Below are positions 17,050 through 54,502 of a DNA stretch of 64,000 nucleotides, in pieces. Origin of the DNA: Podarcis pityusensis (lineage: Eukaryota). The position numbers were made by a program, and so were the translations under genes. Position 1 is the first letter of the stretch. The number at the start of each line of letters is the position of its first letter. Location of the stretch: the NCBI GenBank assembly GCA_964106645.2, contig OZ067038.1; one strand, written 5' to 3'. Below the pieces are notes generated by a model. The model did not search any database and had not been told where the DNA came from. It saw only the letters and a list, made by a program, of their open reading frames with translations.

Positions 17050-17662
17050 TGATAATAATTCAATTTCCATTTGGGAACTGTTTTCATCCTGAAATAAAAA
17101 AATTAAGGTCTTATATATATAAAATAAATGTTTATAAATGTACCAACAAAGCATGTACATAGCTATGTGGACCACATGTCTGGAGCAGCACAGGAAGACC
17201 GCCCTGAAACCATTTTGACTCCCAAACTGACCAAATGTTTTCTCTGCAAGGAGGGAGGGGGTGAGGGAACCTTCCAATTGTCTCAGGAATTGGGAAATCA
17301 CCATCTCAAAGGAATGGCCAGACTACCAGGAAAGGCAATCAAATAAGGCATTACCAGATAACCTGACAGAAAGGAAAAACAGCAACATTCAAATTTCTGT
17401 TGTAGACCACCTATGATGTTTGGGGGGGGTGGTCTTGAGCTCCAGGGAAGGCAATTTAAAATGTCTATATAAAGGCAGGCACACCTTTGTTCTGGGTCCT
17501 CCTCCTTTCCTGCGTGTGAGGGGAGCACCCTGTTGCAACAGTTCAATAAAGATCAGGCTTACTAGCTACTTTGCTTCTCAATATTCTCTGGTTGGCCTCT
17601 GTTATTTTCTCCTACCGATGGAGAACCTACAAAGGACTTTATAAGGGCTTGTGTCCCCCATA
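17050..17662 (+). mobile_element. Putative ERV solo LTR (boundaries approximate)
   Basis: U3-R-U5 layout: TATATAAA at 17466-17473, AATAAA at 17545-17550, then a U5-like pyrimidine-rich tract. TG...CA ends and a TSD could not be pinned down. Confidence 0.55.
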
Positions 17663-17954
17663 AGGGAATAAGAGCAGATTTTGTTTATTATAATCCAGAG
17701 ACGGGTATCTAAATTAACTATACTGTTAGTGACTGTGGGATCTGTGTAAACATTTGGCCTCTGAATTTTTTGCTCATCAGTGCTACAATTTTGCCTGTGC
17801 TGCATAAACACCTCCAGATATTGTTGCTGTTTCCCTGTATACTTAATAAGTAGATGTGACTTGAGGTGAATAACAGTGAAGCACTTTGTTTATGTACGAA
17901 ACAGCTTTCTTTTGTTTTCTTTCATCTCATACTTCTCATTCTTTTCTGTTGCAG

Positions 17955-18011
17955 GTTCTTAACCTGGAAAGAAGACTGTTGCCTCTGTACAGTAGAAGCT
18001 AAATCTTGTGT
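17955..18011 (+). other. SLC8A3: 5' UTR portion of the SLC8A3 large exon
   Basis: A long pyrimidine tract (~17905-17950) followed by GCAG|G, then 57 nt with no ATG before the start codon. Confidence 0.85.
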
Positions 18012-19780
18012 ATGGCGTGGTTAAGGTTGCAACCTGTCAGCTCAGCCTTCCTCCGTTTTGGGCTCATTACTTTTGTCCTTTTTTTACATGGTCTGCAGGT
18101 GGACGCTGGCACGGGGGCAGATCCAGCCAGCATAGGACAAAACAGTACATGCTCAGGTTCCTCGGTGTGCAAGGAGGGTGTTATCTTGCCAATATGGTAC
18201 CCAGAAAACCCATCTCTGGGGGACAAAATTGCCAGGGTTATTGTTTACTTTGTGGCGCTGATCTATATGTTCCTCGGTGTCTCTATCATTGCTGACCGCT
18301 TCATGGCATCCATAGAGGTCATTACTTCGCAAGAAAAAGAGGTCACCATCAGGAAACCCAATGGAGAAACCACCACCACCACCATCCGAGTTTGGAATGA
18401 AACTGTTTCCAATTTGACCCTCATGGCTCTTGGTTCCTCTGCTCCTGAGATCCTCCTGTCATTGATAGAGGTCTGTGGCCATGGATTCATTGCTGGCGAT
18501 CTGGGACCTTCAACCATAGTTGGCAGTGCAGCTTTCAATATGTTTATTATCATAGCCATCTGTGTCTATGTCATTCCTGATGGCGAGGTGAGGAAGATAA
18601 AGCATTTGAGGGTCTTCTTTGTCACTGCAGCTTGGAGCATCTTCGCCTATATCTGGTTGTACATGATCCTTGCGGTTTTCTCTCCAGGCGTGGTCCAGGT
18701 ATGGGAAGGCCTCCTCACTCTGTTCTTCTTCCCTGTTTGTGTCCTCCTGGCTTGGATAGCAGACAGAAGGCTGTTCTTCTACAAGTATATGCACAAAAAG
18801 TACCGTACTGACAAGCACAGAGGTATTATCATTGAGACTGAGGGGGAGCACCCCAAAGGGATTGAAATGGACGGTAAGATGATGAACTCTCACTTTCTGG
18901 ATGGAAACCTAGTGCCTATGGAGGGGAAAGAGGTGGACGAGTCTCGCAAAGAGATGATCCGGATTCTCAAGGATCTGAAGCAAAAACACCCAGAGAAAGA
19001 CTTAGACCAGCTGGTGGAAATGGCCAATTACTATGCCTTATCTCATCAGCAAAAGAGCAGAGCGTTCTATCGGATTCAGGCCACCAGGATGATGACTGGA
19101 GCAGGAAATATCCTTAAAAAGCATGCAGCTGAGCAAGCCAAGAGGAGTGCTAGCTTGCATGAGGTGCGGCCAGAGGAACCAGAGGACTTTATCTCAAAAA
19201 TTTGTTTTGATCCTTGCTCCTACCAGTGTCTGGAGAACTGTGGTGCTGTCCTCCTAACCGTCGTTCGGAAAGGAGGAGACATATCCAAGACAATCTATGT
19301 GGACTACAAAACGGAGGATGGCTCTGCCAATGCGGGGGCTGACTATGAGTTTACAGAAGGGACGGTTGTCTTGAAGTCAGGGGAGACCCAGAAAGAGTTC
19401 TCTATAGGGATCATTGATGATGACATCTTTGAGGAAGATGAGCATTTCTTCGTGCGCCTCAGCAACCTGCGGGTGGTTGAGACAGACGAACCTCCTCCGG
19501 AGCTCAATAACTTGCCATACCCCAAGGCCATGCTGGCCTCTCCTTATGTGGCTACTGTGACTATCTTAGATGATGACCATGCGGGCATCTTCACCTTTGA
19601 GTGTGACGTGATACATGTCAGTGAGAGCATTGGGGTAATGGAGGTGAAAGTCCTTAGGACATCTGGTGCCCGAGGTACAGTCATAGTCCCTTTTAGAACA
19701 GTAGAAGGAACAGCAAAAGGAGGTGGAGAGGACTTTGAAGATGCGTATGGGGAGCTGGAGTTCAAGAACGATGAAACTGT
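18012..19780 (+). CDS. SLC8A3: Sodium/calcium exchanger 3 (NCX3), first large coding exon: signal peptide, TM1-5 with alpha-1 repeat, XIP, CBD1 and start of CBD2. Partial CDS; it continues in exons not seen in this window.
   Basis: The translation MAWLRLQP...CKEGVILPIWYPENPSLGDKIARVIVYFVALIYMFLGVSIIADRFMASIEVITSQE...GSSAPE...GSAAFN...RRLFFYKYMHKKYRTDKHRG...DDDIFEEDE...LEFKNDETV matches the NCX3 paralogue-specific N-terminus and loop. The acceptor is a polypyrimidine tract plus TTGCAG| ending at 17954, and the donor GTAAGT is at 19781 (phase 2). The true start is the ATG at 18012, not the TTG at 18006. Confidence 0.98.
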
Positions 19781-20215
19781 GTAAGTACCTTGCTTTAATT
19801 TCTTCAGAGGTCAACTATTTATTTAACTCCAGAATTTTCTTCCATCACAGGTAAACAAGGGCAACATGTAATGGACTGTCCTCTTTCCCTTCCCTCTAGT
19901 CTCCATACTTATCTCCCCCCAGGCAAGAACCCTACAGCAGGATCTGGGCTTTTCTGCTCTCCTCCTAGGAATGAATAAATAGGGCTGCATTTTTCTTTAA
20001 TGGCCTAATGGGAATACCTTTGAAACTTTACTTGAGTATTGTTAAAATTGTGACAAGATTAAATTCCAAAATAAAATTGGGGTCTTGGTCTAGATGAATA
20101 TTCCCCAAATTAATTGTCATTGACTCATGCTATTATCAAATTGAATGAGTTATGGTTGTAGGACTAGATCCTTGGTCATCATACCCTGATCTTACTGGTT
20201 CATCTAATCAGTTAC

Positions 20216-27212: not shown

Positions 27213-27280
27213 AACAATGTTCTTTTGCTCAAAAGGTGACTTCGTTGTTAAGCCATTTCCGAACTTCAGAGGAGAGGGGG

Positions 27281-28011
27281 TTGCGGGACATCCCCTCCCG
27301 CACACGCGGGGGCTGACCTTTTGCCCCTGCGAGAACAAGGGAATCCCCGGGCGTGCCTGCGACCCTGCCCGCCAATCGGCGGGCTGGGGAGGCGTGGCCT
27401 AGCCCATTTAAGGCCAGGCGCGCCCGGGGACCGCCCTCTTTGCCCCGTTGCAGCTGATTGGGTTTTCCCATCCCTCCCACCCTCTAGGTTAGCTAGCTAT
27501 GACCTTGCTATGGACTCCGGTTGGTCGCCGCAAGGGGCCTGGTAGGAATTTTTCCAACTTGGCGCACTTCCAGCCTTTTGGTTTTTTCGCCTACCTCGTA
27601 GTAAACGTCACAACTTCCTCGGTATTGGCGGTTAGGCATTGGCGGGGGTAATTGTTATGCAAATGAAGGGGGGGAAGGAAGCGCCATCACCTTCCCCCAA
27701 TGAAAAGGGTAGTCCGGTAGAGGACTCCGGGGGGCGTTGCCTTGTCCGAAACCTAGGGAGGTAAGGGCCTCCGGCACGCCCCCGAGCGGTGACACCCGTG
27801 GGATTCTAGTTGGCGTACTTCAACAGGACTCCCACGGCTTGTGGATAACCCTTCCCGGTCTCCATGCCGGGTAGTCGATAGGAGCCAATGCCTAAGGCTA
27901 ATACCTTTCAATTCCTGTAATCAATAAAGTTGTGGCCTTTTTATGCCCATTAACCTTAAATAATGTGTCCGGTGTCTTCATTTCACATGGGGGAGGGGAC
28001 TTGCCACGCAA
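27281..28011 (+). mobile_element. Young CpG-rich LTR-like solo repeat, likely from a tyrosine-recombinase (Ngaro/DIRS-type) retrotransposon
   Basis: Abrupt rise in GC and CpG content. Imperfect inverted termini TTGCG-GGACA-TCCCCTCCC / GGGAGGGGACTTGCCACGCAA and no TSD. CCAAT at 27372, a GC box, TATA-like CATTTAAG at 27405 and AATAAA at 27923. Confidence 0.6.
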
Positions 28012-28060
28012 TAAGGATTGATGTGCCTCATACAATCACTGTATTCATGGAATAAAATTA

Positions 28061-28445
28061 CTGTATTTTCCTGTGTATAACACGTCCCCGTGTATAACAC
28101 ACCCCCTATTTTGCGGGACTCCAATTTAAGAAAATGGGGGGAGATGGTCCAGAGTTGTTGAGCTTTTTTGGGGGGGGGAATGCTAAATATCACTCACCCG
28201 ACTGACAAACGCTGCCAATCGCACGCGTCGCCAAAGCCAACAGCAGCCATCAATTGGACGCAGCAGCAGCCAATCCAAGCCAGCCCTTGACGCAACCACC
28301 CACCAAATCACTGCTGATAAGCTCCTGATCACAGATGCAACCAATCGCCCATCCCCCCTCTGCACTTCCCATGTATAAGATGACCCCAGATTTTTAACAT
28401 TATTTTAGAGTTTAAAAACCTCGTCTTATACACGGAAAAGTACGG
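28061..28445. mobile_element. TcMar (Tc2/pogo-like) MITE
   Basis: TIRs CTGTATTTTCCTGTGTATAA / TTATACACGGAAAAGTACGG with TA flanks. Confidence 0.8.
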
Positions 28446-28482
28446 TATTTTTTGTTGCCATGTTCTTAAATGAGCTGACAGG

Positions 28483-28572
28483 CATAGCTGTCAACTTTTC
28501 CCTTTTCTTGCAAGGAATCCTATTCGGAATTAGGGAATTTCCCTTAAAAAGGGGGAAACGTTGACAGCTATG
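28483..28572. mobile_element. 90-bp hAT-like MITE
   Basis: TIRs CATAGCTGTCAAC / GTTGACAGCTATG. The 8-bp flanks CTGACAGG / CAGATAGG match at 6/8. Confidence 0.75.
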
Positions 28573-29229
28573 CAGATAGGACAATGCCCTAAGACTTTGA
28601 GGCTGGCTGAAAGTGTTCTAGCTTATGAAAGTGCAATAAGTCTTGCAACTGGTGTTACCTCCCTATAAGCAGGTGAATAAAAAATAGGAGCATAGTTTCA
28701 TTTTGGAGGCAGCCTCAACAGGAATAAAGAAAACACAATACGAATGACAATGGGATACTCATCATGCTGACGGAGCCTGTGAAGACATATGAGGAATGCC
28801 ATTCCTTTTCCTCTTTCACAGAGCCTTGTGTACATTCCCATTCTGAATTGAAACTTTATCTATTCCTTGTAAGCTGTAGAAAATCGGATCTGCCCATATA
28901 TGGAAAGAACTTTAAAAAACAACAACGCACACACAAGATTAGAAGAAATTATTGTCGCTAGTTCTGGTAGTTGAGATTTAAATTAACATTAGCAATATAG
29001 GTTGATTTTTGTTGGAATATGTAAATGCTTAGAGATCACTAGTAATATAAAATGGCATACAAATTAAAATAATCATAATAAAGTGAGTTGGCAGTGAATT
29101 CCCAAGGTTGAATTCTTGAAACGTAGGTAACATCTTAAAATATGCCAGGTTCAACATTTCATGATGGGTAAAATCAATATCATGAATTTTATAATTGGTG
29201 GTGGTGATGATGATGATGATGATATTTAT

Positions 29230-52198: not shown

Positions 52199-54502
52199 GT
52201 AATTTTTATTAAAGTTTTAAACAACAAAGAAATAAAAGAAAAACATACACAATACATCTAACAAAAACACAAAGAACAAAAAAAAGCAAAATTCAACAAT
52301 AAAAATACAAGAAACATAACAATTTAAAAAACAATATCTCTGTTTCATTTCCGATTTTTAGTTGCTTATTTTCTGGACTTCCTCATACCTCCCTCTTTTG
52401 TATTCCAATCCAAATTATTTGTCCAGCAGTTTCTTTTCCACTTTTTTTAATCCCAATCTTTAATTTAATTAGATATTAAAATATATAACTTCAACTTCTT
52501 TAAACCTAATCCTTGGTCTTAATATCATATACCATTAAAATTTTCCCTCTTAATATCAAATTTCCATTTCTTTAAACATCTTTAATCTTAATCTTAATCT
52601 TTAATCTTAGTCTATCATTAACTTTAACCTGTACAGCTGGAAACCTCTTGTTTTCAGTCCAACATCACTCTAACATTCCTTAATTTTACAGTGTTTCTGA
52701 AGGTAGTCTTTGAGTTTCTTCCAGTCTTCCTCCATCAACTCTTCTCCCTGGTCACGGATTCTACCAGTCATTTCCGCCAATTCCATATAGTCCATAAGTT
52801 TCATCTGCCATTCCTCCAGCGTGGGAAGTTCTTGTGTCTTCCAATACTTTGCGATGAGTATTCTTGCTGCTGTTGTTGCATACATAAAGAAAGTTCTATC
52901 CTTTTTTAACACCATTTGGCTGACTATGCCCAGGAGAAAGGCCTCTGGTTTCTTAGGGAAGGTATACTTAAATACCTTTTTTAATTCATTATATATCATT
53001 TCCCAGAAAGCCTTAATCTTTGGGCACGTCCACCAAAGGTGAAAAAATGTACCTTCAGTTTCTTTACATTTCCAACATTTATTATCGGGCAAATGATAGA
53101 TTTTTGCAAGCTTGACTGGGGTTATGTACCACCTGTATATCATTTTCATAATATTCTCTCTTAAGGCATTACATGCCGTAAATTTCATACCTGTGGTCCA
53201 TAACTGTTCCCAGTCAGCAAACATAATGTTATGTCCAACGTCCTGTGCCCATTTAATCATAGCCGATTTTACCGTTTCATCTTGAGTATTCCATTTCAGC
53301 AGCAAGTTATACATTCTTGACAAATTCTTAGTCTTGGGTTCTAACAATTCTGTTTCTAATTTGGATCTTTCCACCTGGAAGCCAATTTTCCTGTCCAATT
53401 TAAATACCTCCATTATCTGATAATAATGAAGCCAGTCTCGCACTTTGTTTTTTAGTTTTTCAAAACTCTGCAATTTCAGTCTATCTCTGTCTTGTTCCAA
53501 AATTTCCCAATATTTCGGCCATTTGACCTCCATATTGACCTTTTTCAAGGCTTTCGCTTCCATTGGTGACAGCCACCTTGGGGTTTTGTTTTCTAACAAA
53601 TCCTTATATCTTATCCAAACATTAAACAGCGCTTTCCTGACAATGTGGTTTTTAAATGCTTTATGTGCTTTGACCTTATCATACCATAAATATGCATGCC
53701 ATCCAAATACATTGTTGAAACCTTCTAGGTCCAAAATGTCAGTGTTTTCAAGAAGTAGCCATTCTTTCAACCAGCAAAAAGCTGCTGATTCATAGTAAAG
53801 TTTGAGGTCTGGCAGGGCAAATCCACCTCTTTCCTTTGCATCCGTTAGTATTTTAAATTTTATTCTGGGTTTCTTGCCCTGCCAGACAAATTTAGAAATA
53901 TCTTTCTGCCACCTCTTGAAACAATCCATTTTGTCCACGATCTGCAAAGTTTGAAACAAAAACAACATTCTAGGCAATACATTCATTTTTATCGCAGCAA
54001 TACGGCCTAGCAGTGAAAGCTTCAAATTTGACCAAATTTCTAAATCTTTTTTCACTTCAGACCAACATTTTTCATAGTTATCTTTAAATAAGTTCCCATT
54101 TTTTGCTGTCATGTTAATCCCCAGGTATTTAACTTTCTTAACCACTGTTAAACCTGTCTCATTCTGAAACCTCTCTCTTTCAAACGGTGTTAAATTTTTC
54201 TCTAGAACCTTGGTTTTTGACTTGTTCAATTTAAATCCTGCCACTTGACCAAATTCTTGAATCAGTTCTAAAACCCTTTTAGTACTAGATTCTGGCTCCT
54301 GTAACGTCAATACTAAGTCATCTGCAAATGCTCTCAATTTGTACTGTTTAGTTCCGACCTGTATACCTTTAACCATCTGGTCCCTTCTAATCATATTCAG
54401 CAGAACCTCCAGGACTGAAATAAAAAGCAATGGGGAAATTGGGCAACCTTGTCGTGTCCCTTTTTCAATTTTCTGGTGCGTCTTATAGAGCGAAAAATAC
54501 GG
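51928..54502. mobile_element. TcMar (Tc2-like) MITE split by an L1 insertion
   Basis: Ends CCATATTTTTTGCTCTATAAGAC / GTCTTATAGAGCGAAAAATACGG. Confidence 0.8.
52162..54471 (-). mobile_element. Young 5'-truncated L1-clade LINE with an uninterrupted ORF2 C-terminal half (ORF track 52670-54430)
   Basis: RT motifs GTRQGCPISPLLF, AFADD and KYLG, plus a zinc knuckle CWKC...HLWWTC. A 16-bp TSD TCTGGTGCGTCTTATA at 52146-52161 and 54472-54487. Confidence 0.95.

What the first reader, a model, noticed from the sequence alone, without database searches (positions are those of the whole stretch)
27541..27595. ENE-like triple-helix RNA stability element inside a reptile retroelement
Seen in sequence: GGUAGG-AA-UUUUU-CCAA...UUGG-UUUUUU-CG-CCUACC. 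This gives a 6-bp lower helix (27541-46 with 27590-95), a U5/U6 internal loop (27549-53 and 27582-87) and an upper helix CCAA/UUGG, extendable by GGC/GCC. It lies ~330 nt upstream of AATAAA (27923). Established: this is the architecture of ENEs (KSHV PAN, MALAT1), which clamp a poly(A) tail in U-A*U triples; TE-borne ENEs have been described mainly from plants and fungi. Inference: this vertebrate retroelement may stabilise its intronless RNA with an ENE. From memory, similar GGAAGGAATTTT...TTTTTGCCTTCC motifs occur in some vertebrate CR1 3'UTRs, which would make the module more widespread; this is unverified.
Basis: partly seen in the sequence, partly recalled or inferred. Interest (0 to 1): 0.8.

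Follow-up and report, generated by a model that had tools for sequence, protein, structure and literature searches.

The report
Conserved ENE-like hairpin in lizard repeat
A young, very abundant LTR-like repeat of a wall lizard (Podarcis-type) genome carries a hairpin with two facing U-tracts, kept through compensating changes in diverged copies and placed beside the predicted poly(A) site, so it is a credible but untested candidate for a poly(A)-clamping RNA stability element in an amniote mobile element.

Summary
GGUAGG-AA-U5-CCAA...UUGG-U6-CG-CCUACC lies at 27541-27595. It is the only match to this layout in the window, where about 0.001 is expected.

It sits in a 742-bp, CpG-rich, TG...CA-bounded LTR-like repeat (27247-27988). 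The repeat is present in thousands of copies in several related lizards. No coding body and no target-site duplication were found.

I fetched 207 kb of Podarcis DNA and found diverged homologues:
- Two intact versions of the hairpin use different stem sequences. Four of 10 pairs changed on both sides.
- U4-U6 tracts, the flanking G-C pairs and a 5' AA are kept in all four copies.

The hairpin abuts a conserved 349-nt folded domain (z -4.2). The closing helices of that domain end about 13 nt before the conserved AAUAAA...CCCA site. A poly(A) tail would therefore emerge next to the U-loop.

Against a strict ENE reading:
- AA/CG spacers separate the U-tracts from the lower stem.
- No Rfam family matches.
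- The RNA 3' end is not mapped.
- Triple-helix formation is untested.

I put an ENE-like poly(A) clamp at about 0.45.

The scan flagged similar hairpins at four other places of this genome (s1-717123, s1-717125, s1-717165, s1-717282).

The parts
27247..27988 (+). LTR-like repeat unit that hosts everything below. It has TGT...ACA ends, 57% G+C and CpG obs/exp 0.73 against about 0.2 in the flanks. It is high-copy in related lizards.
   Evidence: The single-copy contig ends at about 27273 and depth falls after 27996.
27541..27546 (+). lower stem, 5' strand (GGUAGG)
   Evidence: The two pairs next to the loop are kept in all four copies: 27545-27591 is G-C in all, and 27546-27590 is G-C in three and A-U in L004a. 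U27543-A27593 becomes A-U in L004b.
27547..27548 (+). AA spacer between lower stem and 5' U-tract, invariant in all four copies (GGAAUUUU)
27549..27553 (+). 5' U-tract (U5 here, U4 in three diverged copies). Proposed Hoogsteen strand.
27554..27557 (+). upper stem, 5' strand (CCAA)
   Evidence: Two C-G pairs are invariant. A-U becomes U-A and G-C in L004b, and G-U in L004a.
27558..27577 (+). apical part: GGC/GCC helix (27561-63 with 27573-75) and a 9-nt loop. Its length and sequence vary among copies (4-nt loop in L004b, +3 nt in L004a, 1-nt deletions in many copies).
   Evidence: (table 4)
27578..27581 (+). upper stem, 3' strand (UUGG)
27582..27587 (+). 3' U-tract (U6 here, U4-U5 in the other copies). 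Proposed Watson-Crick partner of the poly(A) tail.
27588..27589 (+). CG spacer on the 3' side. Not conserved (A, G or longer in other copies).
27590..27595 (+). lower stem, 3' strand (CCUACC)
27597..27643 (+). 5' strands of the long-range closing helices: 27597-601, 27603-05, 27607-16, 27621-29, 27632-43
27644..27883 (+). variable interior of the closed 349-nt domain, poorly conserved between subfamilies
27884..27945 (+). 3' strands of the closing helices: 27884-95, 27897-905, 27927-36, 27938-40, 27941-45
   Evidence: A27638-U27889 becomes C-G in L004b and L009b.
27923..27928 (+). AATAAA poly(A) signal, the only one in the element on either strand. Kept in L004a, L009a and L009b.
27946..27949 (+). 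CCCA, conserved 17-21 nt after the hexamer in all copies. Predicted cleavage and polyadenylation site.
   Evidence: for the conservation. The site itself is an inference; the RNA end is not mapped.
27964..27979 (+). GU-rich stretch in the position of a downstream polyadenylation element
   Evidence: for the sequence. The role is inferred.

Best explanation
The hairpin is a conserved RNA structure in the 3' part of transcripts of an LTR-like repeat family of lacertid lizards. Its most likely job is that of an ENE: to bind the transcript's own poly(A) tail and slow its decay.

Proposed mechanism:
1. Transcription runs through the element on the + strand and ends about 20 nt after AAUAAA, at the conserved CCCA (about 27949).
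2. A 349-nt domain (27597-27945) folds on itself through conserved long-range helices. The start of the tail is thereby brought within about two dozen nucleotides of the base of the hairpin.
3. The first adenosines of the tail run along the GG/CC end of the lower stem.
4. Four to six adenosines then pair with the 3' U-tract (27582-87), while the 5' U-tract (27549-53) lies in the major groove. This gives U.A-U triples capped by the invariant C-G pairs of the upper stem.

Shown here: the layout, its open U-loop in predicted folds, its conservation with compensating changes, the conserved scaffold, and the conserved AAUAAA...CCCA.

Inferred: transcription, the RNA end, tail binding and stabilisation.
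For: - The layout is exact and rare by chance.
- It is the predicted structure alone (z -2.83) and in context (pair probability 0.97-0.99, U-tracts unpaired with P >= 0.97).
- It is the majority state of a repeat with thousands of copies in at least two species. No majority variant lies inside it, and the listed indels fall in the apical loop.
- Diverged homologues were found in Podarcis lilfordi loci by profile search.
- L004b folds on its own into GG(A)AAGG-AA-U4-CCUGC-loop-GCAGG-U4-A-CCUUCC.
- A covariance model made from the window hairpin alone finds all three homologues (E 4e-5 to 0.02).
- On the four copies, 83% of cells pair against 33-61% when partners are slid. Four of 10 pairs changed on both sides, against 0-1 slid and 21/500 shuffles. 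RNAalifold gives the same layout.
- The domain 27597-27945 has z = -4.20. Its 12-bp perfect stem exceeds 60/60 shuffles.
- The closing helices are kept in other copies, with an A-U to C-G change and wobble-compatible changes.
- AATAAA and a CCCA 17-21 nt later are conserved.
- Precedent: ENEs embedded in LTRs of plant and fungal elements (PMC13541005, legend of its figure on where ENEs sit in their RNAs), ENEs in stickleback retroviruses (PMC7583470), and a proven role in Evade mobility (PMC12501189).
Against: - The U-tracts are separated from the lower stem by AA (5') and 0-2 nt (3'). In Evade, the G-C pairs immediately next to the U-tracts were essential (PMC12501189).
- Three of the four copies have only U4 on the 5' side.
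- No Rfam family matched, even when 101 nt were searched alone.
- Two of the four copies (L004a, L009a) have eroded stems and do not fold this way.
- The covariation rests on four sequences, and three of the four double changes come from one copy. The alignment was fitted to the structure.
- The domain folds as well on the minus strand (z -4.96), so energy alone does not pick the strand.
- RNA reads of a related species cover both strands at low depth, with no listed start or end near 27949.
- No coding partner or second LTR was found, so a polyadenylated element transcript is assumed and not seen.
Confidence: 0.45

Rival explanations
1. The hairpin and the scaffold are a conserved RNA structure with another job. 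The U-rich loop would be a protein-binding or processing signal, for example an upstream U-rich enhancer of the nearby poly(A) site brought close by the folded domain, or a packaging, export or priming signal of the element. No triple helix with the tail would form.
For: The same conservation and covariation as above. The invariant AA in front of the 5' U-tract and the non-canonical lower junction fit a sequence-specific ligand better than a plain ENE. The 10-bp closing helix includes two bases of AAUAAA, which suggests control of the poly(A) signal.
Against: Two facing U-tracts closed by G-C pairs on both sides are the specific hallmark of ENEs. Single-stranded U-rich protein sites need no symmetric loop. 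No candidate protein or known motif was identified.
Confidence: 0.28
2. No function. The motif arose by chance in the master copy of a successful repeat, is inherited passively, and the apparent covariation among four copies is luck plus alignment fitting.
For: Chance sites of this strength are expected some tens of times per genome and hundreds of times over the whole scan. Only four homologues were available, and two are eroded. The shuffle control is reached in 21/500.
Against: An independent fold of a copy about 50% diverged elsewhere gives the same layout with different stem letters at the homologous place. The hairpin halves are among the few conserved islands in an alignment of 54% identity. 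The motif sits beside a separately significant, conserved scaffold.
Confidence: 0.15
3. The conserved GGAATTTTCC block acts at the DNA level as a transcription-factor site of the element's enhancer. It resembles Rel/NF-kB-type sites from my own knowledge; this was not tested. The hairpin would be incidental.
For: GGAATTTT(C/T)C is kept in all four copies. LTR U3 regions commonly carry such sites (general knowledge).
Against: This does not explain the conserved 3' half, the compensating stem changes, the facing U-tract or the G-U pairs that work only on the + strand RNA.
Confidence: 0.08

Closest known systems
KSHV PAN RNA ENE (single-domain ENE)
   Same: One stem-loop with a U-rich internal loop of about five U on each strand, closed by G-C pairs. 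It lies upstream of a poly(A) tail and is proposed to form U.A-U triples plus minor-groove contacts with the lower stem (PMC7583470).
   Different: The host is a cellular repeat, not a herpesvirus lncRNA. An invariant AA and a variable 0-2 nt spacer lie between the U-tracts and the lower stem. The hairpin is 328 nt from the hexamer in sequence, but is predicted to be brought close by a folded domain. There is no sequence or Rfam similarity.
ENEs of plant and fungal transposable elements, including LTR-embedded ones and Arabidopsis Evade/Copia93
   Same: A stability element carried by a mobile element near the 3' end of its RNA. Some are embedded in LTRs (PMC13541005), and a functional link to mobility is shown for Evade (PMC12501189).
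   Different: Most plant elements have double-domain ENEs. Here there is one U-rich loop. In Evade, the G-C pairs directly adjacent to the U-tracts are essential, and here the lower ones are offset. The host is an amniote.
ENEs reported in stickleback fish retroviruses
   Same: The only vertebrate retroelement ENEs mentioned in the reviews I could read (PMC7583470).
   Different: I could not read the primary paper (Tycowski 2016 is not held), so no sequence or structural comparison was possible. Host and element differ.
MALAT1-like triple helix plus mascRNA modules, multiplied in anole lizards
   Same: Triple-helix stability modules known to be multiplied in a lizard genome (PMC10869381, citing Zhang 2017).
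   Different: Those use a genomically encoded A-rich tract and a tRNA-like structure cut by RNase P. Here there is no A-rich tract, no tRNA-like fold and no Rfam match, and there is an AATAAA instead.
HTLV-1/BLV-type folded R region that bridges poly(A) signals
   Same: A large folded domain in an LTR that brings distant sequence elements near the poly(A) site (my own knowledge, not checked here).
   Different: There the fold joins the hexamer to a distant cleavage site. Here hexamer and cleavage site are normally spaced, and the fold joins a U-loop hairpin to them.

Membership tests
ENE (poly(A)-binding triple-helix stability element) | Stem-loop with an internal loop whose two strands are both U-tracts | tested here: met
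   U5 facing U6. Both are unpaired with P >= 0.97 and the stems have P 0.97-0.99. U4-U6 is kept in four copies.
ENE (poly(A)-binding triple-helix stability element) | G-C pairs directly adjacent to the U-rich loop (needed for A-minor contacts and triplex capping) | tested here: inconclusive
   Upper side: two C-G pairs, unchanged in the three copies that align there (L009a is gapped), abut the U-tracts. Lower side: two pairs (G-C, one A-U in L004a) are kept, but they are offset by an invariant AA (5') and 0-2 nt (3'). The requirement is as stated in PMC7583470 and PMC12501189.
ENE (poly(A)-binding triple-helix stability element) | Lies near the 3' end of a polyadenylated RNA | tested here: inconclusive
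   AATAAA lies 328 nt downstream on the same strand and is conserved, together with a CCCA 17-21 nt later. The predicted fold brings the hairpin next to that site. The RNA 3' end was not seen in the reads.
ENE (poly(A)-binding triple-helix stability element) | Structure conserved with compensating changes among homologues | tested here: met
   Four copies. 83% of cells are paired against 33-61% slid. Four of 10 pairs changed on both sides, reached by 21/500 shuffles. An independent fold of L004b agrees. The sample is small.
ENE (poly(A)-binding triple-helix stability element) | Binds oligo(A) as a triple helix and stabilises an intronless reporter RNA | not testable with these tools
   Needs melting, gel-shift, probing and reporter assays.
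ENE (poly(A)-binding triple-helix stability element) | Similarity to curated RNA family models | tested here: not met
   No Rfam 15 family matches at E <= 10 over the hairpin, apart from a structure-less lncRNA fragment on the other strand. I could not verify which ENE models the library holds.
LTR of a retrovirus or LTR retrotransposon | TG...CA ends, internal promoter motifs and a poly(A) signal | tested here: met
   TGT at 27247 and ACA at 27988. CCAAT at 27372, TTTAAG at 27407, AATAAA at 27923, and a GU-rich stretch downstream.
LTR of a retrovirus or LTR retrotransposon | Target-site duplication, or a second LTR with gag/pol between | tested here: not met
   There is no matching flank. No second copy exists in 64 kb. 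No Pfam domain was found in 20 ORFs downstream, nor next to the Podarcis lilfordi copies.
   No repeat tail at the 3' end and no reverse transcriptase adjacent. The only reverse-transcriptase ORF in the window is 25 kb away on the other strand, and its relatives carry LINE-1 ORF2 names.
MALAT1-like triple helix with mascRNA | U-rich loops interrupted by C/G, a genomic A-rich tract and a downstream tRNA-like structure | tested here: not met
   No A-run of 5 or more in the element and no tRNA-like or mascRNA match.

The most novel reading that the evidence does not exclude
A lacertid-lizard LTR-like repeat family carries a single-domain ENE variant. It has an invariant AA hinge below the U-loop, and it is mounted on a conserved 349-nt folded scaffold that delivers the nascent poly(A) tail to it. 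This would be the first transposable-element ENE in an amniote, and the first ENE whose closeness to the tail is created by RNA folding and not by position in the sequence.
Probability: 0.35. Interest if true: 0.75.

Novelty: new variant of a known kind. Interest (0 to 1): 0.6.

Why it matters
RNA stability elements that clamp the poly(A) tail are known from a few viruses, two vertebrate lncRNAs and many plant and fungal mobile elements. In Arabidopsis one was recently shown to drive the mobility of a retrotransposon. Among vertebrate mobile elements, the reviews I read name only stickleback retroviruses.

A conserved example in a young repeat with thousands of copies in wall lizards would show that animal mobile elements use the same trick. 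It would give an experimentally easy case: a 55-nt hairpin with natural variants of U4 to U6. It would also test two open points of ENE design: whether the G-C pairs must abut the U-tracts, and whether a folded scaffold can replace closeness in sequence.

If the hairpin does not bind poly(A), it is still a conserved structured RNA module of unknown role in an abundant lizard repeat.

Tried and rejected
- Rfam at permissive thresholds over 2.2 kb and over 101 nt: nothing relevant.
- Other copies in the window: none by repeat finder or sensitive blastn.
- Exact-pattern scans with anchors placed outside the motif found nothing: viral contigs twice, metagenome contigs twice, prokaryote genome contigs once.
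- Using ORFs of the element to find called genes on other copies: no candidate.
- Looking for a provirus body: 20 ORFs downstream and 10 ORFs near the Podarcis lilfordi copies have no retroelement domain.
- The last two contig look-ups gave no new lizard DNA.
- Two weak covariance-model hits (L010 1297-1366, L006 20982-21051) were rejected. There the 5' strand is A-rich and pairs with the U-tract, so they are a plain long hairpin of another repeat.
- The SINE / RNA polymerase III reading was rejected. There is no tRNA-like head, and the T5/T6 runs would terminate that polymerase.
- The CR1 and MALAT1-like readings were rejected (see the membership tests).
- RNA reads gave no verdict on expression, strand or ends.
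- The search of earlier findings by sequence came back blank.
- Primary ENE papers (Tycowski 2012 and 2016, Mitton-Fry 2010, Zhang 2017) are not held.
Majority letters are described place by place only. The profile made from aligned copies served only to find further copies.

Full report
**The observation.**
- Lower helix: GGTAGG (27541-46) pairs with CCTACC (27590-95).
- 5' side of the loop: AA (27547-48) and T5 (27549-53). 3' side: T6 (27582-87) and CG (27588-89).
- Upper helix: CCAA (27554-57) pairs with TTGG (27578-81). GGC/GCC (27561-63 with 27573-75) closes a 9-nt loop.
- AATAAA is at 27923-28, 328 nt downstream.

I scanned both strands of the window for this layout: U-runs of 5 or more, an upper helix of 4 or more pairs abutting them, a lower helix of 6 or more pairs, and spacers of up to 2 nt. 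Only this site matched. None of 450 dinucleotide shuffles had a match. Looser versions scale to about 0.001 expected per window. That is rare for one window. It still allows some tens of chance sites per lizard genome and hundreds over the whole scan, so rarity alone decides nothing.

Thermodynamically, the first test with arbitrary flanks was unimpressive (z -0.40). The hairpin alone (27538-27598), however, folds exactly this way with ensemble frequency 0.62 and z -2.83. Inside the whole element its pairs have probability 0.97-0.99, and all eleven U are unpaired with P >= 0.97. No Rfam family matches.

**What carries it.** The hairpin sits in a 742-bp island (27247-27988) with TGT...ACA ends, 57% G+C and CpG observed/expected 0.73, against about 0.2 in the flanks. 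It holds a CCAAT, a TTTAAG and a single AATAAA, all on the + strand.

Contigs of public runs laid on it show unique flanks at depth about 45 and summed depths of 1e5 to 5e5 over 27484-27996, in two differently labelled organisms. The stretch was held by runs of eight organism labels. This is therefore a repeat with thousands of copies.
- The window copy differs from the majority letter at only about seven places in 513 nt, none of them inside the hairpin.
- The listed one-base deletions in the hairpin region (27565, 27567, 27572) fall in the apical loop.
- The 5' 240 nt are about twenty times less deep, as expected if that part varies between subfamilies.

There is no target-site duplication, no second copy in the window and no retroelement protein domain in 20 ORFs over the next 8.5 kb. 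The element is LTR-like, but it is not shown to be an LTR.

The host is a lacertid lizard close to Podarcis. A LINE reverse-transcriptase ORF of the window is 83-97% identical to Podarcis muralis and P. lilfordi proteins. The element lies downstream of, and on the same strand as, a large sodium/calcium-exchanger exon (18006-19784). This agrees with the neighbouring note s1-717255.

**Homologues.** No DNA collection on hand holds lizard genomes, and pattern scans found nothing. I therefore used annotated LINE proteins of Podarcis to fetch ten 13-24 kb pieces of P. lilfordi, P. raffonei and P. muralis chromosomes, 207 kb in all. I searched them with the element and then with an iterated profile. 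This gave diverged relatives:
- L004 16414-15789 (L004a)
- L004 14460-13943 (L004b)
- L009 16984-17150 with 17638-17745 (L009a)
- Two 5'-truncated or 5'-unalignable copies: L009 20376-20729 and L009 1852-2149.

Window and L004a are only 54% identical overall. The conserved islands are precisely the following:
- the two halves of the hairpin,
- the strands of the long-range helices described below,
- the block around AATAAA.

**Comparative test of the hairpin.** L004b reads GG(A)AAGG-AA-U4-CCUGC-AUUG-GCAGG-U4-A-CCUUCC. Folded on its own, its minimum-energy structure is the same layout: lower stem, two facing U-tracts, upper stem. Its stems use different letters.
- Relative to the window, U27543-A27593 is A-U.
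- A27556-U27579 is U-A.
- A27557-U27578 is G-C.

In L004a, G27546-C27590 is A-U and A27557-U27578 is G-U.

A covariance model built from the window hairpin alone (ten pairs) found L004a, L004b and L009a at E 4e-5, 2e-3 and 0.02. On the resulting four-row alignment, 83% of cells form pairs, against 33-61% when partners are slid by one to three columns. Four of ten pairs carry changes on both sides, against 0-1 when slid. 21 of 500 column shuffles reach that number. RNAalifold predicts the same layout on the alignment.

Kept in the copies: the pair 27545-27591 below the loop (G-C in all four), its neighbour 27546-27590 (G-C in three, A-U in L004a), the two C-G pairs on top of the loop (in the three copies that align there), the AA in front of the 5' U-tract (all four), and U-tracts of four to six (all four).

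Limits:
- There are only four sequences.
- Three of the double changes come from one copy.
- The alignment was fitted to the model.
- L004a and L009a have eroded stems and do not fold this way, as old decayed insertions might.

**The scaffold.** Right after the hairpin begins a 349-nt domain (27597-27945) that folds far better than shuffles (z -4.20, 0 of 100). It is closed by a stack of long-range helices:
- 27632-43 with 27884-95: 12 perfect pairs, a length reached by 0 of 60 shuffles. This is the stem of note s1-717205.
- 27621-29 with 27897-905.
- 27607-16 with 27927-36.
- Two short outer helices.

The minus strand folds equally well relative to its shuffles (z -4.96), so energy alone does not name the strand. 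The G-U pairs and the poly(A) signal point to the + strand.

In the other copies these helices persist. A27638-U27889 is C-G in L004b and L009b, C27614 becomes U opposite G27929 in L009a, and TTGGC/GCCAA is kept or turned into wobble pairs. Two places where the window differs from the family majority (27899, 27805) are G-U pairs here and G-C in most copies. AATAAA is kept in L004a, L009a and L009b, and a CCCA follows 17-21 nt later in every copy.

The geometry follows. The hairpin ends at 27595. The 10-bp helix starts at 27607, and its partner strand ends at 27936. The likely cleavage site is 27949. A poly(A) tail added there would begin about two dozen nucleotides, through one helical junction, from the base of the hairpin, although the two are about 350 nt apart in sequence.

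**Interpretation.** A hairpin with two facing U-tracts, closed by G-C pairs and sitting beside the place where a poly(A) tail starts, is what an ENE is. Reviews define ENEs as a stem-loop with a U-rich internal loop next to one or more G-C pairs that allow A-minor contacts (PMC7583470). They report them in LTRs of plant and fungal elements (PMC13541005) and in stickleback retroviruses (PMC7583470). In Arabidopsis Evade, such an element protects the RNA from deadenylation and raises mobility (PMC12501189).

The tail strand would run parallel to the 5' strand of the hairpin. It would go from the lower stem upward, which fits a tail that arrives at the base.

I therefore take an ENE-like poly(A) clamp as the single most likely function, at about 0.45. 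The main reservations:
- The lower junction is not canonical: an invariant AA, and a variable 3' spacer.
- In Evade, the directly adjacent G-C pairs were essential.
- Most copies have U4 and not U5.
- No curated model matches.
- Nothing shows that such a transcript exists. RNA reads from a related species lie on both strands at low depth, without listed ends.

Rivals:
- A conserved structure with another ligand or a role in poly(A) site control (0.28).
- Passive inheritance of a chance motif (0.15).
- A DNA-level factor site at GGAATTTTCC (0.08).

The remembered CR1 parallel is not supported.

The scan has flagged ENE-like hairpins in LTR-like repeats at four other places of this genome (s1-717123, s1-717125, s1-717165, s1-717282). 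One of those notes claims covariation among three diverged elements. I could not read those stretches. My own comparison, on independent DNA from other Podarcis assemblies, points the same way.

**Care taken.** The copies are compared and described only.

Noticed in passing
window 27597-27945: A 349-nt domain closed by stacked long-range helices (12, 9, 10, 3 and 5 pairs). z is -4.20 on the + strand and -4.96 on the - strand. The interior is free to vary between subfamilies while the closing strands are conserved. The 10-bp helix includes two bases of AAUAAA, which may also control use of the poly(A) signal.
   Followed up: yes
window 28054-28452: A MITE-like element with 31-nt terminal inverted repeats (28054-84 and 28422-52). 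It is very high-copy in the read data, and many copies lack the inner 220-240 nt. It gives weak miRNA-precursor-like Rfam hits (mir-1422, E 0.009), and RNA reads pile up on its ends.
   Followed up: partly
window 28482-28573: A second nearby palindrome with 28-nt arms, 86% complementary and 36 nt apart. It gives weak plant-miRNA-like Rfam hits and is probably another small inverted-repeat element.
   Followed up: no
window 18006-19784 (+): A 592-aa ORF that is the large exon of a sodium/calcium exchanger (Pfam Na_Ca_ex, Na_Ca_ex_C, Calx-beta). The LTR-like repeat lies 7.5 kb downstream on the same strand, so its AATAAA is in sense orientation, presumably within an intron of that gene.
   Followed up: partly
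window 52670-54430 (-): A 586-aa LINE reverse-transcriptase ORF, 83-97% identical to Podarcis muralis and P. lilfordi proteins. This identifies the host as a Podarcis-like lacertid.
   Followed up: yes
L010 1297-1366 (-) and L006 20982-21051 (-): Two copies of another Podarcis repeat that form a long, near-perfect hairpin (CGCAAGACGAAA...UUUUUUCGUCUUGCG). Its flanks faintly resemble those of the ENE-like hairpin. Here the U6 tract is paired with an A-rich strand and does not face a second U-tract. Whether it is a distant relative is open.
   Followed up: partly
L004 13943-16414 (-) and L009 1852-20729 (+): Diverged members of the family occur in clusters: two within 2.5 kb around the first exon of a cytochrome P450 gene, and three within 19 kb on an unplaced scaffold. 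They share orientation but belong to different subtypes, so they are not the two LTRs of one insertion.
   Followed up: partly
window 27938-27944: In most copies of the family the A at 27943 is T. This gives a run of seven U between the hexamer and the predicted cleavage site, and it is the third U-tract of the element. Its role, if any, is unknown.
   Followed up: no
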